A stretch of 63,815 nt of DNA, counting the filler, from Octopus bimaculoides (taxonomy: Eukaryota): the NCBI RefSeq assembly GCF_001194135.2. It is 7 parts of 6 records of this genome, joined end to end, with 100 filler letters (N's around TTAATTAATTAA, not from the genome) between each part and the next. Parts side by side here need not be neighbours in the genome. Positions count along the whole stretch, not along the records: positions 35,922 to 52,138 come from NC_069008.1; 6 more parts are not named here. One strand, written 5' to 3'. A program made the position numbers and the translations under genes. The notes beneath the pieces are model-generated. The model worked only from the letters and a program-made list of their open reading frames with translations, searched no databases and had not been told where the DNA came from. Positions 34,772-52,138 of this stretch are shown one piece after another. Numbering within the stretch: position 1 is the first letter of the stretch; each line of letters starts with the position of its first letter.

Positions 34772-36017
34772 GAATCTAAGTATCCACGGGTATGAATCTA
34801 GGATATCGTAACGTGTATCCTTTCATGGTAACACCAATTACACAAACATTGTTCAACAAACAGAAAAGAATGTTTAAAGAGTCAATAAAATGTAGTTTTA
34901 CATTTACATTTCTTAATGAAGTATTTATAACTATTTCCATACTACATGCAACTATCAGTCTCAGTATGTAAATATTTATGCAACGTCTTTCCATTACACT
35001 TTATTCAATGTCGTCCTTTAAATATAAAAAGGTTATCCAAACTTGGATTGAAGAGATTTCACCTCTTTAAGATGTAAGGGAGAAATTCGTACCTACCCTC
35101 CCGTGATAATAATCTCAAACTTACAGAATAAACAAAGTGTGTTTTAACATTATCTTTAAACAAATATAGCACATATTTCATTCACGTATTACTATCTACC
35201 TAATCGTCTATGTATCTCTCTGTATATTTCTCTTTTTATACTCCACTATATTTATCTCTTAGCATACATACATACATGCATACATACATCCATAAATACG
35301 TACATATAATGGTATATTCGTTGATCTATCTATCTACCAAATGCTATTAAAGTAACGAAGTAACCAATATGAATGAAGTGAACAACACAAGAATAGTTTC
35401 ATGTAAGGCACTCTAGAGATTTTGTATTTAGTAGATTTTTGTCTATATGGGATCATTTGATTACATAGCGAATAGAGTGTTATAGGTCTGTACCAATAAT
35501 ATAGCTAGCCATGCGAGCACATCTTTGTGTGAAGTTTCATGAAAGATAATATTATCTAACAAAAGATAGCAAACGTGATCTATAATAACATTTTCTCTCT
35601 TTACTTGAATGCTTTTCTGCTGCTTTCAACTATAATGAGAATATACACAGAATACAGACTAGTACAACTTCCACCTTGGTATTCCTTTTTTTTTTTTCAT
35701 CTAGATAAAAAATCTAGTGCTTACTCAATTATTGCTCCTGTTATCAGTATCAAATATCGACATTGTTATAGGAACAATCAATCGCTGTCTGATTATGTGT
35801 GTGGATGTGTGTGCGTGTGTGNNNNNNNNNNNNNNNNNNNNNNNNNNNNNNNNNNNNNNNNNNNNTTAATTAATTAANNNNNNNNNNNNNNNNNNNNNNN
35901 NNNNNNNNNNNNNNNNNNNNNCACACACACACGATGAGCTTCTCTCTACCAAATAAACAGTGCGTGTGTTTATTACCGGCATAATGCCTCTCCCAAGGTT
36001 TAATTATATTAATTTTC

Positions 36018-36252
36018 TTATTTCTTTATTGCCCACAAGGGGCTAAACATAGAGAGGACAAACAAGGACAGACACAAAGGGATTAAGCCGATTACATCAA
36101 CCCCAGTGCGTAACTGGTACTTAATTTATCGACCCCGAAAAGATGAAAGGCAAAGTCGACCTCGGCGGAATTTGAACTCAGAACGTAGCGACAGACGAAA
36201 CACCGCTAAGCGTTCCGCCCGGCGTGCTAACCTTTCTGCCAACTCGCAGCCT
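36018..36252 (-). mobile_element. SINE-B, tail-type-2 subfamily
   Basis: Reverse complement closely matches 61311-61541, including the tail ...TTTAGCCCCTTGTGGGCAATAAAGAAATA. Confidence 0.95.
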
Positions 36253-36365
36253 TCTGTCCATATTAAGTTTCTGTATACACATTAGCAATCCGCTAAATCA
36301 TCCATAGATTTCTATGGTGACAGATTTCTATGTACTGACAGAGCATTAAGTCCGGAATCAGGCGA

Positions 36366-36436
36366 GTCGAGCGGTCTCTACTGATGAGGCTACGGAATTA
36401 GCCGAAACTGACCGATCAGTATAGGGAATTCTCGAC
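36366..36436 (+). ncRNA. Type I hammerhead ribozyme, full-size
   Basis: GTCGAG-cgg-TCTCTA CTGATGA GGCTA cggaat TAGCC GAA ACTGA ccga TCAGT A TAGGGA-att-CTCGAC. Perfect core, stem II 5 bp, stem III 5 bp, stem I 6+6 bp with an internal loop, GUA cleavage triplet (cut after 36421). Confidence 0.92.
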
Positions 36437-36666
36437 CGGTGTTTTCGGATGATTACAGTCCCTGTTAGTACACATGTATACAATTATGTGATTTTAACTA
36501 CAGCAATAGAGCGTTTTAGCTCTTATTTCTAGCAATGTAGCTGTTCTAACACGCTTAGCCACATTTAGTAACAATTATAGTTTTCCTTTTTGGTAACACA
36601 TTGCACTCGGCTGTCTATATTAATTTCGCGCGTGCGCATCTGTGTGTGTGTGTATTCTTTTATTTC

Positions 36667-37412
36667 TTTATTTGTTTCAGTCATTTGGCTGCGGCCATGC
36701 TGGAGCACCGCCTTTAGTCAAACAAATCGACCCCAGGACTTATTCTTTGTAAGCCTAGCGCTTATTCCATCGGTCATTTTTGCCGAACCGATATGTAACG
36801 GGCACATAAACACAGCATCGCTTGTCAAGCGATGGTGGGGGGACAAGCACACACAAACACACACACACACACACACACACACGACAAGCTTCTTTCAGTT
36901 TCCGTCTGCGAAATCCACTCACAAGGCTTGGGTCGGCCCGAGGCTATAGTAGAAGACACTTGCCCAAGGTGCCACGCAGTGGGACTGAACCCGGAAACAT
37001 GTGGTTGGTTNNNNNNNNNNNNNNNNNNNNNNNNCTTTATTTGTTTCAGTCATTTGGCTGCGGCCATGCTGGAGCACCGCCTTTAGTCAAACAAATCGAC
37101 CCCAGGACTTATTCTTTGTAAGCCTAGCGCTTATTCCATCGGTCATTTTTGCCGAACCGATATGTAACGGGCACATAAACACAGCATCGCTTGTCAAGCG
37201 ATGGTGGGGGGACAAGCACACACAAACACACACACACACACACACACACACGACAAGCTTCTTTCAGTTTCCGTCTGCGAAATCCACTCACAAGGCTTGG
37301 GTCGGCCCGAGGCTATAGTAGAAGACACTTGCCCAAGGTGCCACGCAGTGGGACTGAACCCGGAAACATGTGGTTGGTTAGCAAGCTTCTTACCACACAG
37401 CCACGCCTGCGC
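36667..37412 (-). mobile_element. SINE-A, represented twice across a 24-N gap (36667-37010 = 37035-37378)
   Basis: Apparently identical sequence either side of the gap; the ORF track shows identical translations. Confidence 0.9.
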
Positions 37413-38082
37413 CTGTGTGCACATGCGCGCGCGCGTGTGTGTGTGAGTGTGCGTGTGTGTATTTGTGTCTGTGATTGTCCCCCACCACCGCTCGACTGCA
37501 GGTGCTGGTGAGTTTACATCCCCGTAGCTTAGCAGTTCAGCAAAACAGACCGATAGAATGAGTACCAGCTTCAAAGAAAAAAAAAAAGGATAATAAAAAA
37601 AAAAGTACTGGCGTAGATTTCATTCAACTAAAAACTCTTCGAGACGCTGCTCCAGCATGGTCGCAATCAAATAACTGAGACGTGTAATGATAATAAAAAT
37701 AAAAATAAAAATAAAAGCGAAAAGAAAAAAACAAAAGGGGAGAAAAGAAGCACTAAACGACTCTGGAGGTGATTTGAGAAAGATACTGTTGACTGCTATT
37801 TCTAGCAGGTGGTATGAGCCACTAATTACCCTCGCACTTTAGCATCGCAGGATATTTGGTGGGCGTTGTTGGTGTTGTTTTAAATAGGGAAAAACTTCTG
37901 AACCTCAAAACGTCGTTGATGCATCTCGTCAAATATGACAATAGCCCACATAAACGCAACACAGTCACCATGCACGTCCCCTTACTCGGCCGCCTCACAA
38001 ACAACCCGCTCAATGCAACGCCCGGGAAGAGGTCAAACGCGGTGAGGTGACATGGGTGTATGTGTGGAGGAGGAATGTACGT

Positions 38083-38118
<36 letters not shown>

Positions 38119-39041
38119 ATGTGCGTGTCTCTCCATATATGTATGTGTGCGTGTTGGTAAATGTGTGTATATGTATATATNNNNNNNNNNNNNNNNNNNN
38201 NNNNNNNNNNNNNNNNNNNNNNNNNNNNNNNNNNNNNNNNNNNNNNNNNNNNNNNNNNNNNNNNNNNNNNNNNNNNNNNNNNNNNNNNNNNNNNNNNNNN
38301 NNNNNNNNNNNNNNNNNNNNNNNNNNNNNNNNNNNNNNNNNNNNNNNNNNNNNNNNNNNNNNNNNNNNNNNNNNNNNNNNNNNNNNNNNNNNNNNNNNNN
38401 NNNNNNNNNNNNNNNNNNNNNNNNNNNNNNNNNNNNNNNNNNNNNNNNNNNNNNNNNNNNNNNNNNNNNNNNNNNNNNNNNNNNNNNNNNNNNNNNNNNN
38501 NNNNNNNNNNNNNNNNNNNNNNNNNNCCTCCCCCCCAGCATCGCTTGACAACCGATGCTGGTGTGTTCACGTCCCCGTAACTTAGCGGTTCGGCAAAAAG
38601 TGACCCGATAGAATAAGTACTAGGCTTACAAAGAATAAGTCCTGGGGTCGATTTGATTCGACTAAAGGTGGTGCTCCAACATGGCCGCAGTCAAATGACT
38701 GAAACAAGTAAAAGAGTAAAAGAGTATATATATATATATATATATATATATACTTGTATATATACACACGCATCGTTGTTTATACCTTAAGTATGTATGC
38801 ATGCATGTGTGTGCGTGCGCGAATACGTATATGTATGTGTGTGTGTGTATGTGTTAAGCGTGTGCGTGTGCGTTCGTGCAAATGTCTGTAAATGTGTATA
38901 TGAGAATGTATATATATATGCTTGTATATGCACACACACATCTTTGTCCACACCATAAGTATGTATGCACGTATGTGTGTTTGTGCACGAGTACGTATAT
39001 ATATGTGTGTGTGATTGTATGTGTGTGTGTGTGTGTGTGAT

Positions 39042-39076
<35 letters not shown>

Positions 39077-39480
39077 TTCCCAATCTTATGCTTCCGGGTT
39101 CAGTCCCAATGTGTTGCACCTTGGGCAAGTGTCATCTACTAGAGACCTAGACCAACCAAAAACTTGTGAGAGGATTTAGTAGACGGAAACTGGAATTGAA
39201 GGAATCCCGTCGTTTATATGTATGTGTATGTATGTGTGTGCGTGTGTGTGTGATTATGTGCGCGTGTGTGTACGTTTGTATCTTTGAGCTTGACAACCGG
39301 TGCTGGTTTGTTTACATCACTGTAACGTAGCAGTTCGGTAAAAGAGACGAACTGAGCAACGATAGGGATTTTTAGAATACAAGTACTAGTGGCAATTTGT
39401 TCGACTAAAACCCTTTCAAGACGGTACTCCAACATGGCCGCAGTTCAAATGACAGAAACAAGTAAAAGATTATATATCTA

Positions 39481-39965
39481 CGAGGTGGTATCAAAAAGCT
39501 CCCGGATTAGTTCTTTAGCGCGCAAACAGATGGCAGCACACAGTTGCGTGCGCAGTGAGAGCTAGCAGTAACCTCTATAAAGCAGTGTGCCGAGTGTCAT
39601 TGCTGTGCTTACTTTGCAAGTTGTGGAATCTGTGTTTTGTGGAATCTGTGTTGTCAGCGATTTTGTCATGGACAAGCACAAAGAGCTAACGTGAAATTTT
39701 GCGTTAAACTTGGGAAGTCTGCTGCAGAGATATTGCTTCGGCAACCTTACAGCAACGCGGCAATGGATCGTACGCAATGTTTCGAGTGGCATGGCCGCTC
39801 CAAAAGCAGATGAACATCCTTGGAAGACGCTGAGTGATCTAGAAGAGCTGACATGAAACTCACCCCTGGAAATGTGGTATTGTGCATTGAGAATTCTTCC
39901 CCCAGGGCCAGACCATCAATCGAGGGTTCCACTGCGATGTTTCGAAGCGTTTGAGGCAGGACATC
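39481..39965 (+). mobile_element. Mariner derivative, second copy, 3'-truncated
   Basis: TA-CGAGGTGGTATCAAAAGC left TIR; [16 protein letters not shown]; GQTINR. Homologous to 33433-34121 and cut by SINE-B. Confidence 0.85.
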
Positions 39966-40300
39966 CCGAAAGGATGTAAGGCAAAGTCGACCTCGGCGGA
40001 ATTTGAACTTAGAAAGTAACGGCAGACGAAATAGCGCTAATCATTTCGTCCAGCGTGCTAACGTTTCTTATTGCTTTATTGCCTACAAGGGGCTAAACAT
40101 AGACGAGACAAACAAGGACAGACAAAGGGATTAAGTCGATTACATCGACCCAATGCGTTAACTGGTACTTAATTTATCGACCCCGAAAAGATGAAAGGCA
40201 AAGTCGACCTCGGCGGAATTTAAACCCAGAACGTAACAGCAGACGAAATACCGCTAAGCATTTCGCCCGGCGTGCTAACGTTTCTGGCAGATCGTCGCCT
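39965..40300 (-). mobile_element. SINE-B partial head (39965-40067) + full tail-type-2 copy (40068-40300)
   Basis: Match to the reverse complement of 61311-61541. Confidence 0.9.
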
Positions 40301-40568
40301 ATAATTACACAAAATTATAGTGGCAATGGTTATTGTTTCTAAAAAAGATTTAACTACACATTTATTATAATACCTACTAATATAGATTGTACTCTTGCTC
40401 TCCTGTTCTTCTATATTTGTATGTATAGCTGAATTTATGTACGTACGTGTGTGAGTATGCTGTATGTCTGTACGCATGCGTATGTGTGTGTAAATATGTG
40501 TATGCATGTATACATGTATATAAAAATGCATACGGATATGAATAAACACTCACATAAATGCACAGACA

Positions 40569-40636
<68 letters not shown>

Positions 40637-41790
40637 NNNNNNNNNNNNNNNNNNNNNNNNNNNNNNNNNNNNNNNNNNNNNNNNNNNNNNNNNNNNNNNN
40701 NNNNNNNNNNNNNNNNNNNNNNNNNNNNNNNNNNNNNNNNNNNNNNNNNNNNNNNNNNNNNNNNNNNNNNNNNNNNNNNNNNNNNNNNNNNNNNNNNNNN
40801 NNNNNNNNNNNNNNNNNNNNNNNNNNNNNNNNNNNNNNNNNNNNNNNNNNNNNNNNNNNNNNNNNNNNNNNNNNNNNNNNNNNNNNNNNNNNNNNNNNNN
40901 NNNNNNNNNNNNNNNNNNNNNNNNNNNNNNNNNNNNNNNNNNNNNNNNNNNNNNNNNNNNNNNNNNNNNNNNNNNNNNNNNNNNNNNNNNNNNNNNNNNN
41001 NNNNNNNNNNNNNNNNNNNNNNNNNNNNNNNNNNNNNNNNNNNNNNNNNNNNNNNNNNNNNNNNNNNNNNNNNNNNNNNNNNNNNNNNNNNNNNNNNNNN
41101 NNNNNNNNNNNNNNNNNNNNNNNNNNNNNNNNNNNNNNNNNNNNNNNNNNNNNNNNNNNNNNNNNNNNNNNNNNNNNNNNNNNNNNNNNNNNNNNNNNNN
41201 NNNNNNNNNNNNNNNNNNNNNNNNNNNNNNNNNNNNNNNNNNNNNNNNNNNNNNNNNNNNNNNNNNNNCCTCTGAATATACGGGGCTGATGCGGGTGGGG
41301 GGGGGCGGTTTCACACTATATACACACGTAATATATATAGGCACAAGCGTGGCTGTGTGGGGGTAAAGAGGTTGCTTCCCCGACTATGTGGCCCTAGGTT
41401 CAGTCTCATCGCACGGTACCTAACCTCTGACGGGCCGAAACTTAATGAATGTATATGGTACATGAAAACTGTCACATACACACACACACACACACAAGCA
41501 CAAACGCAGACAACGTTTTTTGTGATGTCCTGTATACATACATGCTTGTATGTATACATATAGGTGTCGGTATGTACATATATGTATGGATATATGCATA
41601 TAATTATACATGTATGTCAATACATACATAAAATCATTCCATCTTAAAACTTCTCTGCATCATGATCCAAAATGTAAGATCCTTTCTACCCTGATGGAGA
41701 AGAAGGTTTCTGGTTACCTGAATATCGTATGGAACCTTACATCATATGATATTTCTATTACCTGATGTAGTTCTATTAGTTTTGTTTTCC

Positions 41791-42100
41791 TTATTACCTC
41801 CGCCTCGGCGAAGGCAGGAGTATTGTTTTTCAGTTGCCTTTGTTTGTTTGTTGGTTGTCTCTGGACGAGATATCTTAAGAACCGCTGGATGAATTCGGAT
41901 GAAAATTTCAGGAATGTTTGGCCTCGTGACTGGCACGAACTAATTAGATTTGGAGATCGATTCGGTACCGGACAAGAATTCTGGATTATTGTTCCTGTAC
42001 TTTTTTACTTAATTTTTGAGATTGGTCGGGTTCATTTTTAGCATTCTCGTTTGTGAGAGTTGTCGAGCTTATTTCACATATTCTCATTTTAAAAATCATC
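41791..42100 (+). mobile_element. Helentron/HINE (DINE-1-like) non-autonomous element, 5' part
   Basis: TTATTACCTCCGCC..GGCG.AGG hairpin start, (TTTG)n, then GATATCTTAAGAACCGCTGGATGAATTCGGATGAAA.TTTCAGG. This is the layout of HINE-type elements, recalled from known families. Confidence 0.6.
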
Positions 42101-42102
42101 TT

Positions 42103-42216
42103 GAGAGGACGTTGGCAGAGTGGACGTTGGCGGAGAGGACGTTGGCGGAGGACGTTGGCTGAGAGGACGTTGGCGGAGAGGACGTTGGCGGAGGACGTTG
42201 GCGGAAGACGTTGGCT
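42103..42216. repeat. Minisatellite (GA)GAGGACGTTGGC(G), 13-15 bp units x~8, running into a gap
   Basis: Read directly. Confidence 0.95.
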
Positions 42217-42687
42217 NNNNNNNNNNNNNNNNNNNNNNNNNNNNNNNNNNNNNNNNNNNNNNNNNNNNNNNNNNNNNNNNNNNNNNNNNNNNNNNNNNNN
42301 NNNNNNNNNNNNNNNNNNNNNNNNNNNNNNNNNNNNNNNNNNNNNNNNNNNNNNNNNNNNNNNNNNNNNNNNNNNNNNNNNNNNNNNNNNNNNNNNNNNN
42401 NNNNNNNNNNNNNNNNNNNNNNNNNNNNNNNNNNNNNNNNNNNNNNNNNNNNNNNNNNNNNNNNNNNNNNNNNNNNNNNNNNNNNNNNNNNNNNNNNNNN
42501 NNNNNNNNNNNNNNNNNNNNNNNNNNNNNNNNNNNNNNNNNNNNNNNNNNNNNNNNNNNNNNNNNNNNNNNNNNNNNNNNNNNNNNNNNNNNNNNNNNNN
42601 NNNNNNNNNNNNNNNNNNNNNNNNNNNNNNNNNNNNNNNNNNNNNNNNNNNNNNNNNNNNNNNNNNNNNNNNNNNNNNNNNNNNNNN

Positions 42688-42714
<27 letters not shown>

Positions 42715-42718
<4 letters not shown>

Positions 42719-43135
42719 TTGCCGTATTTCTCCGGCCGCTTTAACAATCTGAGTTCAAATCTCGCAGAGTCATCTTTTCCTTTCACTTTTTCGAGGTCGG
42801 TAAAATAAAATACCAGTCAAAAACTGGTGACAATGAAATCAACTGGCCCCTCTCCCCACAGAATTTCAGGCCTTGTGCCTATAGTAGAAAGGATTATTAT
42901 GTGAGATTGTTTTTAAGGTGATAAGCTAACAGAATCGTTAGCACGCCGGACAAAACGCATAGCAGCATTTCGCCGGTTTTTATGTCCTGCGTTCGAATTC
43001 CACCGAGATACACTTTGCCTTTCATCCCTTTCGGGATCGATGATATAAAGACCCAGAATGCTCAGGTCGATTTTATCGATTAACTCTTTCCCCCTCAAAA
43101 TTTCAGACCTTGTGCCAAAATCTGACGCCATTATT
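42715..43135 (+). mobile_element. Two tandem SINE-B copies (42715-42900; 42914-43135)
   Basis: GAGTTC(A/G)AAT B-box-like motifs; tails GCCTTGTGCCTATAGTAGAAAGGATTATTAT and CCTTGTGCCAAAATCTGA. Confidence 0.8.
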
Positions 43136-43289
43136 GTGCACATGATTCATCAATATATTAATTTTGATCCACCAAAATGTTTCCTTCGACCATATCTATA
43201 CTCCTTTAGGTGCCACGTCTAGAATGTAGGATATAGGGACTAGCGTTGCTAGAGTGTGCCGTCTGAGGCGGCTCTTCTGTTTGCCGCCT

Positions 43290-43840
43290 CGGCTGTGTAG
43301 TAAGTAGCTTGCTTACCAATCACATGGTTCTGAGTTCAGTCCCACTGCGTGGCACCTTGGGCAAGTGTCTTCTACTATAGCCTCGGGCCGATCAAAGCCT
43401 TGTGAGTGGATTTGGTAGACGGAAACTGAAAGAAGCCCGTCGTATATATGNNNNNNNNNNNNNNNNNNNNNNNNNNNNNNNNNNNNNNNNNNNNNNNNNN
43501 NNNNNNNNNNNNNNNNNNNNNNNNNNNNNNNNNNNNNNNNNNNNNNNNNNNNNNNNNNNNNNNNNNNNNNNNNNNNNNNNNNNNNNNNNNNNNNNNNNNN
43601 NNNNNNNNNNNNNNNNNNNNNNNNNNNNNNNNNNNNNNNNNNNNNNNNNNNNNNNNNNNNNNNNNNNNNNNNNNNNNNNNNNNNNNNNNNNNNNNNNNNN
43701 NNNNNNNNNNNNNNNNNNNNNNNNNNNNNNNNNNNNNNNNNNNNNNNNNNNNNNNNNNNNNNNNNNNNNNNNNNNNNNNNNNNNNNNNNNNNNNNNNNNN
43801 NNNNNNNNNNNNNNNNNNNNNNNNNNNNNNNNNNNNNNNN

Positions 43841-43879
<39 letters not shown>

Positions 43880-44090
43880 GTTTGTGTATCTGTGTTTGTC
43901 CCCCCAACTTCGCTTGACAACCGATGCTGGTGTGTTTACGTCCCCGTAACTTAGCGGTTCGGCAAAAAGAGACTGATAGAATAAGTACTAGGCTTACAAA
44001 GAATAAGTCTTGGGGTAGATTTGCTCGACTAAAGGTGGTGCCCCAGCATGGCCACAGTCAAATGACTGAAACAAGTAAAGGAGTAAAGAG
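43290..44090 (+). mobile_element. SINE-A whose internal microsatellite contains an N-gap
   Basis: Head 43290-43445 and 3' half 43880-44090. Confidence 0.9.
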
Positions 44091-44199
44091 TATATATATT
44101 GCTTACAGCAGACCCAAAAGTGCCGTCCCTTTAAAAGTGCCGCCCAGGGCGGACTGCTCCCTTCCCCAGCTACGCTAGTGGGTATCGGCAATCATGTTA

Positions 44200-44634
44200 A
44201 CAGTTCCATTTCCTGGTGCTTAATGTCTTTTTCTACCAACCAATTCGTCAGGGTTGACATTTATATCATCCTTTTCCTTCCTCTCCTTCTTTCCCTTTTA
44301 ATCTTCCCGGTCATCGCCAGATTCTCCAGGTCCTGTTTCCTCATCACATATCCCAGAAACCTCAGTTGCTTGGCAATTATCCCACGAAACATTTTCCTAT
44401 TTACCGCAACCCGAGTCAACACTTCTTCATAGAATCTATGTCTGTCCGTAATATCCTCAATATTCGCCTTCGGAACTACAGTTCCTATTAGCAATGTCAC
44501 ACTTCCATACAGTAACACAGACTAGACATAGCAGTTCAATATATGGACTTTGGTCTTGGTGCTGAGAGCACAATTTCTCAAGATGTTATTTTGAGAATGC
44601 AGATTTTGCCAGCACCATCACCAGATATGCAAAA
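44200..44634 (-). pseudogene. RTE LINE 3' fragment, same family as 13515-14995
   Basis: LLYGS..; KQLRFLGYVMRKQDLENLAMTGKI..RRGRKR. Shares GCTGGCAAAATCTGCATTCTCAAAAT with ~14523. Confidence 0.85.
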
Positions 44635-44663
44635 GTGAATATTTTATGGCGTATGTGTTGTGT

Positions 44664-44952
44664 GTTGGCACTCCGTCGCTTACGACGTCGAGGGTTCCAG
44701 TCGATCCGATCAACAGAACAGCCTGCTCGTGAAATTAACGTGCAAGTGGCTGAGCACTCCACAGACACGTGTACTCTTAACGTAGTTCTCGGGGGATATT
44801 CAGCGTGACACAGTGTGACAAGGCTGACCCTTTGAATTACAGGCACAACTGAAACAGGAAGTAAGAGAAAGGTGTGATGAAAGAGTACAGCAGGGTTCGC
44901 CACCATCCCCTGCCGGAGCCTCGTGGAGCTTTAGGTGTTTTTGCTCAATAAA
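44664..44952 (-). mobile_element. SINE-C
   Basis: Reverse complement of 51459-51837; runs into a gap. Confidence 0.95.
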
Positions 44953-45496
44953 NNNNNNNNNNNNNNNNNNNNNNNNNNNNNNNNNNNNNNNNNNNNNNNN
45001 NNNNNNNNNNNNNNNNNNNNNNNNNNNNNNNNNNNNNNNNNNNNNNNNNNNNNNNNNNNNNNNNNNNNNNNNNNNNNNNNNNNNNNNNNNNNNNNNNNNN
45101 NNNNNNNNNNNNNNNNNNNNNNNNNNNNNNNNNNNNNNNNNNNNNNNNNNNNNNNNNNNNNNNNNNNNNNNNNNNNNNNNNNNNNNNNNNNNNNNNNNNN
45201 NNNNNNNNNNNNNNNNNNNNNNNNNNNNNNNNNNNNNNNNNNNNNNNNNNNNNNNNNNNNNNNNNNNNNNNNNNNNNNNNNNNNNNNNNNNNNNNNNNNN
45301 NNNNNNNNNNNNNNNNNNNNNNNNNNNNNNNNNNNNNNNNNNNNNNNNNNNNNNNNNNNNNNNNNNNNNNNNNNNNNNNNNNNNNNNNNNNNNNNNNNNN
45401 NNNNNNNNNNNNNNNNNNNNGGTTATTTGATGACGGTGAACCTACCAGGCATGACTGAAAATATTTTCTTACATTCAAATCCACTAAATTCTAACA

Positions 45497-45851
45497 CAGG
45501 GCGTAGGAGTGGCTGTGTGGTAAGTAGCTTGCTTACGAACCACATGGTTGCGGGTTCAGTTCCACCACGTGGTACCTTGACTGAAACAAGTAAAAGAGAG
45601 GGGGTTCTCAACCATTTGCGTGTGTGTGTATGTTTGTGTGTCTGTGTTTGTCCCTCCCCCCCCACAACATCGCTTGACAACCGATGCTGGTGTGTTTACG
45701 TCCTCGTAACTTAACGGTTCGGCAAAAGAGAACCGATAGCATAAGTACTAGGCTTAGAAAGAATACGTCCTGGGGTCGATTAGCTCGACTAAAAGGCGGT
45801 GCTCCAGCATGGCCACAGTCAAATGACTGAAACAAGTAAAAGAGTAAAGAG
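45497..45851 (+). mobile_element. Rearranged SINE-A (head fused to tail, then a second 3' half)
   Basis: ...CACGTGGTACCTTGACTGAAACAAGTAAAAGAG followed by (TG)n and a normal 3' half. Confidence 0.8.
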
Positions 45852-46100
45852 TAACAACACAACAGTGAATTGCTGATGCTGAACATACCTTCTTACATTC
45901 AATTCCACTAGATTCTAATCGTGAATTTGCAGCAATGACGTTACTGTTTCTCTTTTTATAACTTAAATCCAAGCTGTTATAACTGCAGCATCTCTGAGTC
46001 AACCTTCGCGTTGCTAACGTCACACATCGTAAACTAGCAACAGCCAATGTGGGTGTCGATGCTATAATAAAGTCTTTATAATATATAATCTCTTTAGATA

Positions 46101-46430
46101 GTGGAGGCGCAATGGCCCAGTGGTTAGGGCAGCGGACTCGCGGTCATAGGATCGCGGTTTCGATTCCCAGACCGGGCGTTGTGAGTGTTTATTGAGCGAA
46201 AACGCTTAAAGCTCCACGAGTCTCCGGTACGGGGTGGTGGTGAACCCTGCTGTACTCTTTCACCACAACTTTCTCTTACTTCCTGTTTCTGTTGTGCCTG
46301 TAATTCAAAGGGTCAGCCTTGTCACACTCTGTGTCACGCTGAATATCCCCGAGAACTACGTTAAGGGTACACGTGTCTGTGGAGTGCTCAGCCGGAAACC
46401 TCGACGTCGTAAGCGACGGGGTGCCAACAA
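46101..46430 (+). mobile_element. SINE-C (tRNA-derived head)
   Basis: GTGGAGGCGCAATGGCCCAGTGGTTAGGGCAGCGGACTCGCGGTC...GGTTTCGATTCCC (A/B-box-like); tail GACGTCGTAAGCGACGG.GTGCCAACAA. Confidence 0.95.
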
Positions 46431-46439
46431 AAAAACCTG

Positions 46440-47245
46440 ATGCACAAAAGGGACAGAGATGCAGACAAAGCAGCAAAATGTGACAACCGGTGCAGACTTT
46501 GTGGATTTAACACTGAAGATATTACCCACATCATAAGCAGTTGTCCGAAAATGTCATTATGGTATTATCTACCGATGAGACATGATGTTGTAGCGAGGAC
46601 ACCGTACAATGAAGATCCGTCGGAAGGATAACCTCAAAGAGAAAGAAATAAGGACCTACAGTATGGTAGAAGATGTAGCAAGAAGGAGTACAAGTGGAAT
46701 GCCCCAGCGAAAACCTCAATTAAATGTAAACATAATAGACCAGCCAGTAAAAATCAGCTGCCCGGCGGATATTAACATAAAGCTAAAGATCAGTGCAAAA
46801 GAAAATACATACGTTGAACTATTGAGGAATCTACAATTACTCTACCCAGATTTCAAGTTCAGGTTTATACCTGTAATTATTGGGGAACTGGGATATGTAA
46901 CACGCTGCCTAAATACCAATCTTGAGAAACTAGGCGTCTCAAAACCAGAAAGGAGTAATCTCATTCGAAGACTACAGTTCTAATCCATCACTGGAACTGT
47001 AAAAGTCTGTGAAACTTTCCAGAAGTTTATCATTTCAGTATATATGATTAACATGATTAGATATGGAAGTGTATGCATGAGAAGACATACATGAAACAAA
47101 ACATACCAATCTACATACATACATACATATATACAAAAATACTGTTGATGTTGAAATTCTAGTGAAGGAGCCTTGGATCTAGGTTAGAAACCGGCTCTTT
47201 CTCTATTGGTAGAAAATCTTGAAATAAAACTGAACAATGATGTAC
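46440..47245 (+). mobile_element. REL-endonuclease LINE (R4/Dong-like), 5'-truncated, family 3
   Basis: CRLCGFNTEDITHIISSCP (CCHC), RHDVVAR, KISAKENTYVELL, FIPVIIGELG. The 3' end AATAAAACTGAA is followed by (TACA)n. Confidence 0.8.
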
Positions 47246-48989
47246 ATACATAATACATACATACATACATACAGGTATCTATGTATGTATAGGTATAGGA
47301 GTGGCTGTGTGGTAAATAACTTGCTTACCAGTTATATGGTTCCGGGATCAGTCTCACTGCGTGGCACCTTGGGCAAGTGTTTGCTACTATAGCCTCGGGC
47401 CGACCAAAGCTTTGTGACGTGGTAGATCGAAACTAAAAGAAGCCTGTCGTATATATATATATATATATATNNNNNNNNNNNNNNNNNNNNNNNNNNNNNN
47501 NNNNNNNNNNNNNNNNNNNNNNNNNNNNNNNNNNNNNNNNNNNNNNNNNNNNNNNNNNNNNNNNNNNNNNNNNNNNNNNNNNNNNNNNNNNNNNNNNNNN
47601 NNNNNNNNNNNNNNNNNNNNNNNNNNNNNNNNNNNNNNNNNNNNNNNNNNNNNNNNNNNNNNNNNNNNNNNNNNNNNNNNNNNNNNNNNNNNNNNNNNNN
47701 NNNNNNNNNNNNNNNNNNNNNNNNNNNNNNNNNNNNNNNNNNNNNNNNNNNNNNNNNNNNNNNNNNNNNNNNNNNNNNNNNNNNNNNNNNNNNNNNNNNN
47801 NNNNNNNNNNNNNNNNNNNNNNNNNNNNNNNNNNNNNNNNNNNNNNNNNNNNNNNNNNNNNNNNNNNNNNNNNNNNNNNNNNNNNNNNNNNNNNNNNNNN
47901 NNNNNNNNNNNNNNNNNNNNNNNNNNNNNNNNNNNNNNNNNNNNNNNNNNNNNNNNNNNNNNNNNNNNNNNNNNNNNNNNNNNNNNNNNNNNNNNNNNNN
48001 NNNNNNNNNNNNNNNNNNNNNNNNNNNNNNNNNNNNNNNNNNNNNNNNNNNNNNNNNNNNNNNNNNNNNNNNNNNNNNNNNNNNNNNNNNNNNNNNNNNN
48101 NNNNNNNNNNNNNNNNNNNNNNNNNNNNNNNNNNNNNNNNNNNNNNNNNNNNNNNNNNNNNNNNNNNNNNNNNNNNNNNNNNNNNNNNNNNNNNNNNNNN
48201 NNNNNNNNNNNNNNNNNNNNNNNNNNNNNNNNNNNNNNNNNNNNNNNNNNNNNNNNNNNNNNNNNNNNNNNNNNNNNNNNNNNNNNNNNNNNNNNNNNNN
48301 NNNNNNAAAAAAAAAAAAGATGAGGTAAGGTAAGGTGAGAGAAGTGGCGGTGTGTCGGACTCGCTTTTAAAACACAGACACTCTCCTCTCTTAGTAAAAG
48401 AAAAAAAATAACAAAAAAAAAAAATGAAGAAAAAAGCCTGGCGAGATATTTGATTGGCGAAGAAGAAAGGCATCGCTACTCTTAACAGCCTTTGTTGGTC
48501 ATCGTACGGCCAACATAAACACAGATTGATACATGCAATATACACACGTACACACACATATATATATATATACACGCATACACATACATACATACATGCA
48601 TACATACATACATACATACATACATACACACTCATACATTCACCCATCCATTCATATATATATATATATAATTACGTATATAAATACACACACACAATAT
48701 ATATATTGTGTGTGTGTATGTATGTGTGTACATATATATATATATATACATACAAACATATATATGTTTATACACACACATATATATATATATATATACT
48801 TACACACACACACACACACACACACATACACACACACATATAAACGTATTTACATTCATTTACAAATACTTATCTATATTCATATGGGTGTATACATACG
48901 TATATGTATATATATACACACACACATATATATATATATATGTATATGTACACACACACACATATATATATATGTATATGTATATATGC

Positions 48990-49023
<34 letters not shown>

Positions 49024-50940
49024 GAATGGACATATATATATATGAATACACACTCACACACAGACATATATATTGTATATGTATGCATAATGCGTGTGTG
49101 TGTGTACGTAGATGACTTTGAAGCTGGCGGCCATTTTGGGCAAATTTGTAATATAAAGAAGCCACTATCTTTCCTCTTGTTAATGTTGTTAAATGCTCTG
49201 TTATTTTAGAACATTCTGCTGTTTTTTTAAAAATTTATTTTATTTAACTATGAAACCGGTCGCAATCGTCGTAGTCGTAGTCGTAGCCATGGTCGTAGTC
49301 GTTATCGTCGTAGTGGTCGCAGTTGATGTGGCCGTCGCTGTCACCGATGTTGTTAGTGTGGTCGTTGTTCTGGTTCGTGTAGTTCAAGAATCATTTCTCT
49401 GCGGTCCATAAGCTCAGGTTGAGTCCAGTATTGCGTAAAGTAGGTGCGTATGTGTACTCCAGGCGAACCAGGGCGAAACTCCACGCGTACGCACACGCAC
49501 GCACACACACGCACACACACACACGCGCACACACACACGCACACACACGCAAACACACAGAGACACACACATACACCACACACAGAGACAGACAGACACA
49601 CAGACACATATACACACTCAGAGACACACACAAACACATACAGACAACACACACACACACACAGACGCACACACACAGACGCACGCACACAGACACACAT
49701 AGACAGGATCTTGTTCAAAACGGGGGCACCAGTATTTTCTTAACGAAACACTTTGAAACTTGGGACACTGGTACAATGTGTCATATAAAACATCTTTTTC
49801 TCTTAGTCTTCTTAACAAAAAAACGTACATCGCAAGTTATTTCATGTTAAAGTTGTCGTATTTCTGTAATTTCAACCAATGACTGACGTCCATTCAGCCG
49901 ATATACATTAAGTGCTGACTACGTAAACAAACAATTCTGGCGGTGATAAAATTATTATTTCCTTGTCAAAAAATGGCTGAAGCATATTGGCAGTAGCTAA
50001 TAAACCTTTCTATTATAGGCACAAGGCATGGTTTTTGAGGGAAGGAGCAAGTCAATTNNNNNNNNNNNNNNNNNNNNNNNNNNNNNNNNNNNNNNNNNNN
50101 NNNNNNNNNNNNNNNNNNNNNNNNNNNNNNNNNNNNNNNNNNNNNNNNNNNNNNNNNNNNNNNNNNNNNNNNNNNNNNNNNNNNNNNNNNNNNNNNNNNN
50201 NNNNNNNNNNNNNNNNNNNNNNNNNNNNNNNNNNNNNNNNNNNNNNNNNNNNNNNNNNNNNNNNNNNNNNNNNNNNNNNNNNNNNNNNNNNNNNNNNNNN
50301 NNNNNNNNNNNNNNNNNNNNNNNNNNNNNNNNNNNNNNNNNNNNNNNNNNNNNNNNNNNNNNNNNNNNNNNNNNNNNNNNNNNNNNNNNNNNNNNNNNNN
50401 NNNNNNNNNNNNNNNNNNNNNNNNNNNNNNNNNNNNNNNNNNNNNNNNNNNNNNNNNNNNNNNNNNNNNNNNNNNNNNNNNNNNNNNNNNNNNNNNNNNN
50501 NNNNNNNNNNNNNNNNNNNNNNNNNNNNNNNNNNNNNNNNNNNNNNNNNNNNNNNNNNNNNNNNNNNNNNNNNNNNNNNNNNNNNNNNNNNNNNNNNNNN
50601 NNNNNNNNNNNNNNNNNNNNNNNNNNNNNNNNNNNNNNNNNNNNNNNNNNNNNNNNNNNNNNNNNNNNNNNNNNNNNNNNNNNNNNNNNNNNNNNNNNNN
50701 NNNNNNNNNNNNNNNNNNNNNNNNNNNNNNNNNNNNNNNNNNNNNNNNNNNNNNNNNNNNNNNNNNNNNNNNNNNNNNNNNNNNNNNNNNNNNNNNNNNN
50801 NNNNNNNNNNNNNNNNNNNNNNNNNNNNNNNNNNNNNNNNGTATTCTTGGAATCATAATCCTCGAAAATGAACAGAGATTATCACGGCTGGATTGGCTTT
50901 AGGTTAAACGGGACACGGATGTTTCAGAATTTTCCCCCAA

Positions 50941-51262
50941 TAGGCGCGGGCGTGGCTGTGTGGTAAGTAGTTTGCTTCCCAACCACATGGTTCCGGGTTC
51001 AATCCCACTACGTGGCACTTTAGCTCAGTGTCTTCTACTATAGCCTTAGGCCGACCAAAGCCTTATGAGTGGATTTGGTAGACGGAAACTGAAAGAAGCC
51101 CGTCGTATATACGTATATATGTGTGTGTGCGCGGGTGTGTTTTGTGCCTGTGTTTGTAACTCACCACCATCGTTTGTCAAACTTAGCGGTTCGGCAAAAG
51201 ACAACCGATATTATAAATAATACGCTTACAAAGAATAAAGTCCTGTGGTCGATTTCTTTGAC
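50941..51262 (+). mobile_element. SINE-A with internal deletion
   Basis: TAGGCGCGGGCGTGGCTGTGTGGTAAG...GAAGCCCGTCGTATA...AACTTAGCGGTTCGGCAAAAG. Confidence 0.9.
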
Positions 51263-51458
51263 TAAAACTCGCGCGTGCACATGCGCGTGCGTGTGGTCGA
51301 GATTCAATTGTTTGCCAAGTCATTTGAGCTGGAATCTGAGAGCAGATATTGAAACAGAACCGGAAGTACGGAGTTAGATACTGACAGTTTGGGCAGAGTA
51401 TCAGTGACGAAATATTCATATAGCGATAGTCTTTTTGATATTTAATCATATATAGTAT

Positions 51459-51837
51459 GTGGAGGTGCAATGGCCCAGTTGTTAGGGCAGCGGACTCGCG
51501 GTCATAGGATCGCGGTTTCGATTCCCAGACCGGGCGTTGTGAGTGTTTATTGAGTGAAAACACCTAAAGATCCACGAGGCTCCGGCAGGGGATGGTGGCG
51601 AACCCTGCTGTACTCTTTCACCACAACTTTCTCTCACTCTTACTTCCTGTTTCTGTTGTACCTGTATTTCAAAGGGCCAGCCTTGTCACACTGTGCCACA
51701 CTGAATATCCCCGAGAACTACGTTAAGGGTACACGTGTCTGTGGAGTGCTCAGCCACTTGCACGTTAATTTCACGAGCAAGCTGTTCCGTTAATCGGATA
51801 AACTGGAACCCTCGTCGTCGCAACCGACGGAGTGCCA
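51459..51837 (+). mobile_element. SINE-C, full length
   Basis: Head as at 46101; tail GACGGAGTGCCA. Confidence 0.95.
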
Positions 51838-51909
51838 CGATATGTAGTATGTATGTAGATACACACATACGTACATACATACACACATATATAATATTGT
51901 TGTTGTTGT

Positions 51910-52138
51910 TGGCACTCCGTCGCTCACGACGTCGAGGGTTCCAGTTGATCCGATCAACGGAACAGCCTGCTCGTGAAATTAACGTGCAAGTGGCTGAGCA
52001 CTCCACAGACACGTGTACCCTTAACGTAGTTCTCGGGGAGATTCAGCATGACACAGTGTGACAAGGCTGGCCCTTTGAAATACAGGTACAACAGAAACAG
52101 GAAGTAAGAGCTTTAGGTGTTTTTTTTTCGCTCAATAA
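51910..52138 (-). mobile_element. SINE-C, inverted tail-to-tail with 51459-51837
   Basis: ~200 bp reverse-complement match to 51637-51837. Confidence 0.95.

What the first reader, a model, noticed from the sequence alone, without database searches (positions are those of the whole stretch)
36366..36436. Canonical, apparently intact type I hammerhead ribozyme in probable octopus DNA
Seen: all conserved core nucleotides (CUGAUGA 36381-87; GAAA 36404-07; U36420, A36421) with fully paired stem II (GGCUA/UAGCC, loop CGGAAU), stem III (ACUGA/UCAGU, loop CCGA) and a bipartite stem I (UCUCUA/UAGGGA, then GUCGAG/CUCGAC, separated by a CGG/AUU internal loop). Established: this is type I hammerhead architecture, in which the stem I bulge and loop II make activating tertiary contacts; such full HHRs occur in non-LTR retrozymes and some Penelope-like elements. 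Inference: a functional self-cleaving RNA cutting after GUA at 36421, much better preserved than the surrounding decayed repeats, so either a recent insertion or under selection. It is not part of any SINE/LINE recognised here, and only one copy is in the window.
Basis: partly seen in the sequence, partly recalled or inferred. Interest (0 to 1): 0.85.

Follow-up and report, generated by a model that had tools for sequence, protein, structure and literature searches.

The report
Intact hammerhead ribozyme in octopus DNA
A complete, textbook type I hammerhead self-cleaving RNA motif really is encoded at 36366-36436 of this octopus DNA, most likely as a lone copy of a small ribozyme-carrying retroelement, which is a well-known kind of sequence in invertebrate genomes and so is a sound but ordinary find.

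Summary
All invariant core nucleotides and three fully paired helices of a type I hammerhead ribozyme (HHR) lie at 36366-36436 (+). The predicted cut is between A36421 and U36422. A descriptor search finds this one site in the piece and none as good in 3000 shuffles. Extrapolated to an octopus-sized genome, chance gives about 0.6 such cores, and about 0.04 once the outer helix I is required.

New here:
- Helix I continues into a 147-nt hairpin (36331-36472).
- A 16-nt direct repeat 357 bp apart brackets the low-GC, single-copy segment between two SINEs.
- Helix III is long (5 bp), so the motif should work as a monomer.

These features fit a solitary monomer of a non-LTR retrozyme or a Penelope-related element. 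However, no tandem array, no second copy and no RT/endonuclease ORF is present, and no relative could be retrieved.

Caveats: Rfam calls nothing at its gathering scores. The nearest-neighbour model also favours a competing helix (65% against 3% for native helix III).

The DNA is octopod (79% protein match to Octopus vulgaris). Type I HHRs are already recorded in molluscs and cephalopods, including 235 loci in the giant squid. Verdict: a real feature, a new member of a known kind, of low-to-moderate interest. Activity, expression and selection remain untested.

The parts
36366..36436 (+). Complete type I hammerhead ribozyme motif (71 nt)
   Evidence: Read directly. Unique descriptor hit, 0/3000 shuffles as good. 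Hammerhead-fold energy is -22.6 kcal/mol.
36366..36371 (+). Helix I, distal 5' strand GUCGAG; pairs with 36431-36436
   Evidence: Six Watson-Crick pairs.
36372..36374 (+). Loop 1 (internal loop of helix I), 5' side CGG; the opposite side is AUU 36428-36430
   Evidence: It sits 6 bp from the core, as in canonical metazoan type I HHRs (PMC4209133).
36375..36380 (+). Helix I, proximal 5' strand UCUCUA; pairs with UAGGGA 36422-36427
   Evidence: Six pairs, one G-U wobble (U36377-G36425).
36381..36387 (+). Catalytic core C3-A9, CUGAUGA (G5 = 36383, G8 = 36386)
   Evidence: Aligned to the CUGAUGA of the Rfam hammerhead consensus.
36388..36403 (+). Helix II GGCUA/UAGCC (G10.1 = 36388, C11.1 = 36403) capped by loop 2 CGGAAU 36393-36398
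   Evidence: 5 bp.
36404..36406 (+). Catalytic core G12 A13 A14 (GAA); G12 = 36404 is the general base
   Evidence: The role is assigned from established hammerhead mechanism (PMC6155905).
36407..36420 (+). Helix III ACUGA/UCAGU (A15.1 = 36407, U16.1 = 36420) with tetraloop CCGA 36412-36415
   Evidence: 5 bp. This is longer than the 1-2 bp usual in metazoan type I HHRs (PMC4209133).
36421..36422 (+). Cleavage site: A17 (36421) | U1.1 (36422); expected products are 36366-36421 with a 2',3'-cyclic phosphate and 36422-36436 with a 5'-OH
   Evidence: The position follows from hammerhead numbering applied. Cleavage itself was not tested.
36422..36436 (+). 3' strand of helix I (UAGGGA, loop AUU, CUCGAC)
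36331..36472 (+). Extended imperfect hairpin in which helix I continues outward; the hammerhead junction sits at its tip
   Evidence: Fold of 36330-36476: -53.5 kcal/mol, z = -4.0, 0/200 shuffles. Duplex of the flanks alone: -26.8 kcal/mol, reached by 2/1000 shuffles and 7/296 genomic controls.
36254..36269 (+). Left copy of a 16-nt direct repeat, CTGTCCATATTAAGTT
   Evidence: 14/16 identical to 36611-36626, spacing 357 bp. 6/300 shuffles of the 501-bp region give a repeat as good.
36611..36626 (+). Right copy of the 16-nt direct repeat, CTGTCTATATTAATTT; it is either a target-site duplication of a 341-bp insert or the start of a second 357-bp unit
36251..36658 (+). Non-SINE, single-copy, low-GC segment that carries the ribozyme, bounded by SINE 36015-36250 (-) and SINE 36659-37009 (-), with a (GT)n tract at 36640-36655
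   Evidence: SINE borders come from BLAST against an Octopus vulgaris locus. No other copy of 36251-36625 is in the piece or in L153. GC is 39.8% for the 357-nt unit.

Best explanation
This is a genuine type I hammerhead ribozyme inherited by descent from a hammerhead-bearing retroelement. It is most likely a solitary (monomer) genomic copy of a small non-autonomous non-LTR retrozyme, or a close relative derived from Penelope-like element terminal repeats.

Proposed mechanism, if the + strand is transcribed:
1. Helices II and III form as local hairpins.
2. The 3' strand UAGGGA..CUCGAC closes helix I.
3. Loop 2 (CGGAAU) docks on the internal loop of helix I (CGG/AUU).
4. The 2'-OH of A36421 attacks the adjacent phosphate, with G12 (36404) as general base and the G8 (36386) 2'-OH as general acid.
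5. This gives a 5' fragment ending in a 2',3'-cyclic phosphate at 36421 and a 3' fragment starting with a 5'-OH at U36422.

Because helix III is 5 bp long, the motif should act as a monomer, unlike the dimer-dependent newt and PLE hammerheads. Helix I extends into a hairpin of about 47 bp, so the two products would stay paired. In a tandem retrozyme that geometry favours re-ligation and circularisation. A lone copy can make only one cut and no circle.

Shown: the motif, its topology, the extended hairpin, the direct repeat, single-copy status in the piece, and the octopod origin. Inferred: descent from a retrozyme or PLE, catalytic activity and transcription.
For: - **Motif:** the core and all three helices are intact. 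It is the only descriptor hit, with 0/3000 shuffles as good and 0 hits at 4/3/3 or better in 40 Mb of Markov sequence.
- **Rfam:** the hammerhead model aligns CUGAUGAG..CGAAAC with E = 1.8e-4.
- **Geometry:** helix I runs 6 bp to loop 1 and helix II is 4-5 bp with a 6-nt loop, as described for canonical metazoan type I HHRs (PMC4209133).
- **Flanks:** they extend helix I beyond chance.
- **Unit:** the carrying segment has a 16-nt direct repeat at 357-bp spacing and 39.8% GC. Folded as a circle it has z = -3.6 and is 60% paired. This matches the published retrozyme description: units of 170-400 nt, low GC, highly self-paired, target-site duplications longer than 4 bp, and 350-390 bp units in a mollusc (PMC7229834).
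- **Dispersed monomers:** copies of this kind are reported for retrozyme families (bioRxiv 10.64898/2026.07.22.740005).
- **Taxon:** octopod. Type I HHRs are known in cephalopods (PMC6962438).
Against: - **No array:** there is no tandem array and no second copy in 16 kb here or in 20 kb of O. vulgaris, so the defining retrozyme arrangement is absent.
- **No relatives:** none was retrievable, so there is no family consensus, no covariation and no copy number.
- **Rfam:** nothing is called at gathering thresholds.
- **Competing fold:** the nearest-neighbour model prefers the helix ACUGAU 36380-85 / AUCAGU 36415-20. MFE is -24.2 against -22.6 kcal/mol, and occupancy is 65% against 3% for native helix III. 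That model ignores core and tertiary interactions.
- **Loops:** their sequences cannot be matched to the archetypal tertiary-contact nucleotides with these tools.
- **Direct repeat:** it is only moderately significant (6/300) and AT-rich.
- **Left edge:** the piece ends 444 bp upstream of the ribozyme, so upstream context is missing.
Confidence: 0.6

Rival explanations
1. It is the hammerhead of a Penelope-like element: a remnant of a PLE terminal repeat (pLTR) whose RT/GIY-YIG ORF has been lost or lies beyond the left edge of the piece.
For: PLEs carry HHRs in both flanking repeats, and most genomic PLE-HHRs occur as single motifs from truncated elements (PMC4209133). Retrozymes and pLTRs are phylogenetically interleaved. 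PLEs, including old Naiad remnants, exist in Octopus (PMC8557442). The segment ends at a (GT)n microsatellite, and some PLEs prefer microsatellite targets. Only 444 bp lie upstream before the piece is cut.
Against: No RT or GIY-YIG ORF or Pfam hit occurs anywhere in the 16-kb piece. Metazoan PLE-HHRs are described as minimal: short helix I, long helix II of 6-8 bp, almost no helix III, poorly active and dimeric. This one has a bulged 12-bp helix I, a 5-bp helix II and a 5-bp helix III.
Confidence: 0.17
2. It is a host-recruited (domesticated) single-copy ribozyme acting in cis on a host transcript, for example in an intron or UTR, like the conserved intronic type I HHRs of amniotes. It is then kept intact by selection.
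For: It is single-copy in the available sequence and has no defect in 13 core positions or 22 base pairs, while the neighbouring SINE is about 12% diverged from its relatives. The long helix III gives monomer competence, which suits a lone motif. Precedents are in PMC6155905.
Against: No gene annotation, transcript evidence or orthologous sequence is available. The one O. vulgaris locus obtained was not orthologous. The surroundings are SINE- and microsatellite-rich with no convincing coding ORF. Intactness can equally reflect a young insertion.
Confidence: 0.1
3. It is a hammerhead-derived fossil that is catalytically silent. It is either never transcribed or trapped in the more stable alternative fold, so it has no present function.
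For: The alternative helix is predicted at 65% occupancy against 3% for native helix III. There is no detectable promoter-like or tRNA-like element upstream. It is a solitary copy that cannot yield a circular RNA.
Against: Helix III is a local hairpin that forms first in growing-transcript folds (transcript ending at 36421). Thermodynamic models omit the core and loop-loop energy that stabilises active hammerheads. All catalytic nucleotides are intact.
Confidence: 0.1
4. It is a chance match to the hammerhead descriptor in AT-rich repetitive DNA.
For: The extrapolated expectation is about 0.6 motifs with 6/5/5-bp helices per 2.7-Gb genome (extrapolated), which is not negligible if many windows were screened. 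Rfam gives no gathering-level hit.
Against: The added 6-bp outer helix I lowers the expectation to about 0.04 or less per genome, and the roughly 35 further pairs beyond it (2/1000) lower it further. The canonical 6-bp/4-5-bp spacing of the loops is not demanded by the descriptor but is present.
Confidence: 0.03

Closest known systems
Canonical metazoan type I hammerhead ribozymes of non-LTR retrozymes (for example Mytilus galloprovincialis and Acropora millepora; Cervera & de la Pena 2020, PMC7229834)
   Same: Type I topology and a full catalytic core. Helix I has an internal loop 6 bp from the core and helix II is capped by a 6-nt loop. The carrier sequence is low-GC, a few hundred bp long and strongly self-paired. 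The putative 357-bp unit falls within the 350-390 bp reported for the mussel. Self-cleavage as a monomer is expected, as for invertebrate retrozymes.
   Different: There is no tandem repeat here, only one copy plus a 16-nt direct repeat. No sequence relative was retrieved. Helix III (5 bp + CCGA) is longer than the 1-2 bp usually described. The loop nucleotides cannot be matched to the archetypal tertiary contacts. Expression as circular RNA is untested and impossible from a single copy.
Minimal hammerheads in the terminal repeats of Penelope-like elements (Cervera & de la Pena 2014, PMC4209133)
   Same: Type I hammerhead in a metazoan retroelement context. They are often found as single dispersed motifs from truncated elements, and PLEs are present in octopus genomes.
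   Different: PLE motifs have a short helix I, a long helix II (6-8 bp, often with a 5' bulge) and virtually no helix III, and they work poorly and as dimers. This motif is a full, monomer-competent hammerhead, and no RT/GIY-YIG ORF is nearby.
Schistosoma mansoni Sm-alpha hammerhead (SINE-like retroposon; the crystallised full-length type I HHR)
   Same: Type I, with helix I bulged after about 6 bp, a 6-nt loop on a short helix II and a stable monomeric fold. It is carried by a small non-autonomous retroposon.
   Different: No tRNA-like pol III promoter region was detected upstream (ARAGORN found none). The loop sequences differ. The comparison of loop sequences rests on my recollection of the Sm-alpha sequence and was not tested here.
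Rfam Hammerhead_1 loci annotated in the giant squid genome (235 loci; PMC6962438)
   Same: Type I hammerheads in a cephalopod genome.
   Different: This octopus motif does not reach any Rfam hammerhead gathering score, so it would be missed by the pipeline that counted those loci.

Membership tests
Hammerhead ribozyme (any type) | Invariant core: C3 U4 G5 A6 N7 G8 A9, G12 A13 A14, the A15.1-U16.1 pair, and H17 (not G) | tested here: met
   CUGAUGA 36381-87, GAA 36404-06, A36407-U36420, A36421; descriptor hit.
Hammerhead ribozyme (any type) | Three helices radiating from the core, with G10.1-C11.1 closing helix II | tested here: met
   Helices of 6(+6), 5 and 5 bp; G36388-C36403.
Hammerhead ribozyme (any type) | Score at or above the curated Rfam gathering threshold for a hammerhead family | tested here: not met
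   No family reaches its gathering score in the piece. The best is Hammerhead_3 at 29.3 bits against 48.5, a permuted partial alignment. Clan filtering hides the Hammerhead_1 score, which must be lower.
Hammerhead ribozyme (any type) | Mg2+-dependent site-specific self-cleavage giving 2',3'-cyclic phosphate and 5'-OH ends | not testable with these tools
   Needs in vitro transcription. The thermodynamic model predicts a competing fold.
Type I topology | Helix I open-ended; helices II and III closed by loops | tested here: met
   Loop CGGAAU closes helix II and loop CCGA closes helix III. The 5' and 3' ends emerge from helix I.
Canonical metazoan type I HHR (PMC4209133 definition) | Helix I of about 6 bp up to loop 1, and helix II of about 4 bp capped by loop 2 | tested here: met
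   6 bp to the CGG/AUU internal loop. Helix II is 5 bp, or 4 bp plus an A-U closing pair, with a 6-nt loop.
Canonical metazoan type I HHR (PMC4209133 definition) | Conserved loop 1 / loop 2 nucleotides that make the tertiary contacts | tested here: inconclusive
   A and U residues are available in both loops (CGGAAU; CGG/AUU), but no reference alignment was available. Mussel retrozyme HHRs also lack the archetypal nucleotides and still cleave.
Canonical metazoan type I HHR (PMC4209133 definition) | Short helix III (1-2 bp) with a small palindromic loop, implying dimeric action | tested here: not met
   Helix III is 5 bp with the non-palindromic loop CCGA, so it is predicted to be monomer-competent.
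Non-LTR retrozyme | Type I HHR inside short tandem repeats (150-450 bp units, dimers to multimers) | tested here: not met
   There is one HHR and no tandem repeat of the segment. Only a 16-nt direct repeat occurs at 357-bp spacing. Upstream sequence is cut 444 bp away. Monomer derivatives are known.
Non-LTR retrozyme | Low GC (below 45-50%) and a highly self-paired unit of about 170-400 nt | tested here: met
   The hypothetical 357-nt unit has 39.8% GC, circular MFE -92.1 kcal/mol, z = -3.6 and 60% paired. The unit boundaries are inferred from the direct repeat.
Non-LTR retrozyme | Expression as linear and circular RNAs of unit length | not testable with these tools
   No transcriptome access.
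Penelope-like element | HHR within direct terminal repeats flanking an RT + GIY-YIG ORF | tested here: not met
   No such ORF or Pfam match is in the piece. The left side is cut by the piece's edge, so an upstream ORF cannot be excluded.
Penelope-like element | Minimal HHR architecture (short helix I, long helix II, vestigial helix III) | tested here: not met
   This motif has full-length helices.
Sm-alpha-type SINE-like hammerhead retroposon | [quoted passage not shown] | tested here: inconclusive
   ARAGORN finds no tRNA-like structure. The adjacent tRNA-derived SINE (36015-36250) is on the opposite strand and is a separate insertion. A/B boxes were not searched formally.

The most novel reading that the evidence does not exclude
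The motif could be a single-copy, selectively maintained, monomer-active hammerhead that processes a specific octopus transcript. That would make it a domesticated regulatory ribozyme in a cephalopod, analogous to the ultraconserved intronic hammerheads of amniotes. Alternatively it could be the first sampled member of a cephalopod retrozyme family, invisible to Rfam, that yields abundant viroid-like circular RNAs.
Probability: 0.1. Interest if true: 0.55.

Novelty: new member of a known kind. Interest (0 to 1): 0.25.

Why it matters
If active, this locus adds octopods to the animals known to encode monomer-competent type I hammerheads. It also gives a concrete handle for asking whether cephalopods have retrozyme-type circular RNAs. 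The handle is a 71-nt motif inside a 147-nt hairpin and a putative 357-bp unit.

The case also illustrates that covariance-model annotation at Rfam gathering thresholds misses perfectly canonical hammerheads with a long helix III. Published counts, such as the 235 loci in the giant squid, are therefore probably underestimates. Beyond that it does not change what is known: type I hammerheads tied to small retroelements are widespread in invertebrates, including molluscs.

Tried and rejected
1. **Rfam at gathering thresholds over the whole piece:** no hit. E-value mode gave only a permuted Hammerhead_3 alignment and a weak RAGATH-1-hammerhead alignment. The Hammerhead_1 score is hidden by clan filtering.
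2. **Fetching the source contig or other copies through ORFs:** three window ORFs, including the 41-aa minus-strand ORF that spans the ribozyme, are not on record. A protein search with that ORF found no candidate.
3. **DNA scans with CTGATGAGGC-N10-GCCGAAAC:** the metagenome and viral collections returned 152 loci. All were unrelated phage or bacterial hammerheads or coding chance matches, and none shared this loop 2 or helix III.
4. **Orthologue attempt:** the O. vulgaris locus reached through protein P0001 is only a paralogous repeat landscape. It shares SINEs with the piece but not the ribozyme segment.
5. **PLE test:** Pfam scans of the non-gap ORFs in the piece found no RT or GIY-YIG domain.
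6. **tRNA-like promoter:** ARAGORN found none.
7. **The 16-nt repeat as the neighbouring SINE's target-site duplication:** an ATATTAAKTTTCT-like string also lies at the SINE tail (about 36004-36018). Its register relative to the SINE ends is off by 7-10 nt, so this was left unresolved.
8. **Sigma-70 promoter/terminator scan:** not used, because it is irrelevant to eukaryotic DNA.

Full report
**Observation.**
The + strand at 36366-36436 reads GUCGAG-CGG-UCUCUA-CUGAUGA-GGCUA-CGGAAU-UAGCC-GAA-ACUGA-CCGA-UCAGU-A-UAGGGA-AUU-CUCGAC. In standard hammerhead numbering:

| Element | Position |
|---|---|
| C3-A9 | 36381-87 |
| G10.1-C11.1 | 36388-36403 |
| G12-A14 | 36404-06 |
| A15.1-U16.1 | 36407-36420 |
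| H17 | A36421 |
| U1.1 | 36422 |

Helix I has 6 pairs (one G-U wobble), a symmetric 3x3 internal loop, then 6 more pairs. Helix II has 5 pairs with a 6-nt loop, and helix III has 5 pairs with a tetraloop.

**Is it more than chance?**
- A descriptor written for this purpose finds this one site in the piece. It found none with helices of at least 6/5/5 bp in 3000 dinucleotide-preserving shuffles, and 2 at the 4/3/3 level.
- The simple pattern CTGATGA-N(8-36)-GAAA alone is not significant: 22 of 100 shuffles contain it. The weight lies in the helices.
- In 40 Mb of order-1 Markov sequence there were 9 hits at the loose 3/3/2 level and none at 4/3/3.
- Extrapolating geometrically gives about 0.6 chance motifs of this quality per 2.7-Gb genome. 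Requiring the outer helix I lowers this to about 0.04 (inference).
- The flanks pair further. 36330-36476 folds into one hairpin of -53.5 kcal/mol (z = -4.0). The flanks alone form a -26.8 kcal/mol duplex, matched by 2/1000 shuffles and 7/296 genomic controls of the same geometry.

I therefore treat it as a hammerhead by descent, not a coincidence.

**Database recognition.**
- Rfam reports nothing in the piece at gathering thresholds.
- In E-value mode the best match is Hammerhead_3 at 29.3 bits (cut-off 48.5, E = 1.8e-4). It aligns CUGAUGAG..CGAAAC correctly but treats helix I as a hairpin, so it is a permuted partial alignment.
- A truncated query gave the same result, plus a weak type I-shaped alignment to RAGATH-1-hammerhead.

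The motif would be missed by routine Rfam annotation.

**Folding caveat.**
The 3' strand of helix III (AUCAGU 36415-20) can also pair with ACUGAU 36380-85, which overlaps the core. The MFE structure uses that helix, at -24.2 against -22.6 kcal/mol for the hammerhead fold. In constrained ensembles native helix III has 3% occupancy and the alternative helix 65%, whatever the flank length. These models omit the non-canonical core pairs, coaxial stacking and loop-loop docking. In growing-transcript folds the local helix III hairpin forms as soon as it is made. Activity is therefore likely but not assured; I put robust in vitro cleavage at about 0.65.

**Context.**
The DNA is octopod. A 124-aa ORF at 46609-46983 is 79% identical to an Octopus vulgaris protein and 50% identical to an O. 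bimaculoides protein.

BLAST against a 20-kb O. vulgaris locus fixes two minus-strand SINEs, at 36015-36250 and 36659-37009. The ribozyme lies in the 408-bp segment between them. Apart from the terminal (GT)n tract, that segment has no other copy in the piece, in the O. vulgaris locus, or in the 152 metagenomic and viral loci fetched.

Within the segment, a 16-nt direct repeat (36254-69 and 36611-26, 14/16 identical) lies 357 bp apart; 6/300 shuffles do as well. This could be a target-site duplication around a 341-bp insert, or the overlap of 1.04 units of a 357-bp repeat. A hypothetical 357-nt circle has 39.8% GC, z = -3.6 and 60% of bases paired.

No RT or GIY-YIG ORF and no tRNA-like structure is present. 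The piece ends 444 bp upstream of the ribozyme.

**Comparison with what is known.**
- Canonical metazoan type I hammerheads have a 6-bp helix I and a 4-bp helix II whose loops interact. Helix III is usually 1-2 bp, which makes them dimer-dependent (PMC4209133).
- They reside in non-LTR retrozymes. These are tandem units of 150-450 bp with low GC, target-site duplications longer than 4 bp and highly self-paired 170-400 nt circular RNAs. Units of 350-390 bp occur in the mussel (PMC7229834).
- Dispersed monomer copies exist, and retrozymes appear to derive from the terminal repeats of Penelope-like elements (bioRxiv 10.64898/2026.07.22.740005).
- Metazoan PLEs themselves carry minimal hammerheads.
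- A giant squid genome paper lists 235 Rfam Hammerhead_1 loci (PMC6962438). I found no paper describing one in Octopus.

The present motif matches the canonical helix I and II geometry and the retrozyme-like carrier properties. It fails the tandem-repeat criterion. It differs in having a long helix III, which predicts monomeric activity, sensible for a lone copy.

**Explanation and rivals.**

| Explanation | Confidence |
|---|---|
| Real type I hammerhead in a solitary retrozyme-type (PLE-related) retroelement copy, able to cut once at 36421/36422 if transcribed, with the products held together by the long helix I | about 0.6 |
| Truncated PLE terminal repeat | 0.17 |
| Domesticated host ribozyme | 0.10 |
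| Catalytically silent fossil | 0.10 |
| Chance | 0.03 |

Intactness across 57 constrained positions, next to a SINE about 12% diverged from its relatives, is suggestive only.

**Verdict.**
The feature is real and correctly described. It is a new member of a known kind, with modest added points: it is invisible to Rfam, helix III is long, and helix I is extended. Interest is low to moderate. The decisive work is a genome-wide homology search and a simple cleavage assay, neither of which was possible here.

Noticed in passing
window 36666-36965 and 37035-37334, flanking the N run 37012-37034: Two 300-bp blocks that are 100% identical (a SINE copy) sit on either side of a short assembly gap. This looks like a gap-closure duplication artefact rather than a real tandem duplication (D9).
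   Followed up: no
window 35922-52138: 24% of the piece is N (3950 of 16217 bases) in at least ten gaps, and much of the rest is CA/TA microsatellite. It is a low-quality draft scaffold, so local structure near gaps should be distrusted.
   Followed up: no
window 36015-36250 (-), 40065-40300 (-), 39965-40068; L153 17727-17960: A tRNA-derived SINE family with about 88% identity among copies, shared with Octopus vulgaris. A second, more abundant SINE family occurs at 36659-37009, 37035-37414, 43291-44092, 45500-45854, 47289-47467 and 50939-51274.
   Followed up: partly
window 51637-51837 and 51910-52110; also 44663-44794: A 201-nt inverted repeat, 95% complementary with a 72-nt spacer, forms a foldback structure with mirrored 108-aa ORFs. 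One arm is 97% identical to 44663-44794. No Pfam domain was found.
   Followed up: no
window 42103-42215: A minisatellite of about eight 15-nt units (GAGAGGACGTTGGC) abuts an assembly gap.
   Followed up: no
window 46609-46983 (+), 46791-47252: A 124-aa ORF is 79% identical to an Octopus vulgaris 'hypothetical predicted protein' and 50% identical to an O. bimaculoides protein, with no Pfam domain. The DNA is 82% identical to L153 10150-10590. It is probably a repeated, transposon-derived sequence.
   Followed up: partly
window 36380-36399 vs 36411-36430; 36353-36365 vs 36393-36405: Short internal direct repeats lie inside and just upstream of the ribozyme: ACTGATGAGGCTACGGAATT / ACCGATCAGTATAGGGAATT at 75% identity, and CGGAATCAGGCGA / CGGAATTAGCCGA. 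The first underlies the competing alternative helix. Their significance is unknown.
   Followed up: partly
window 36306-36342: A 16-bp unit (AGATTTCTATG...) is repeated 2.2 times just upstream of the extended hairpin and forms its own small stem-loops. The 78-nt stretch 36253-36330 folds with z = -3.1.
   Followed up: no
L020, L089, L121, L126, L141 and other metagenomic or viral loci: Many phage and metagenome contigs carry hammerheads with the same CTGATGAGGC..GCCGAAAC frame, often in repeated families. One example is the ...ACCCGCTGATGAGGCCCCGGCGGGGGCCGAAAC... series, with several copies per contig in L112, L093 and L069. They are unrelated to the octopus motif.
   Followed up: no
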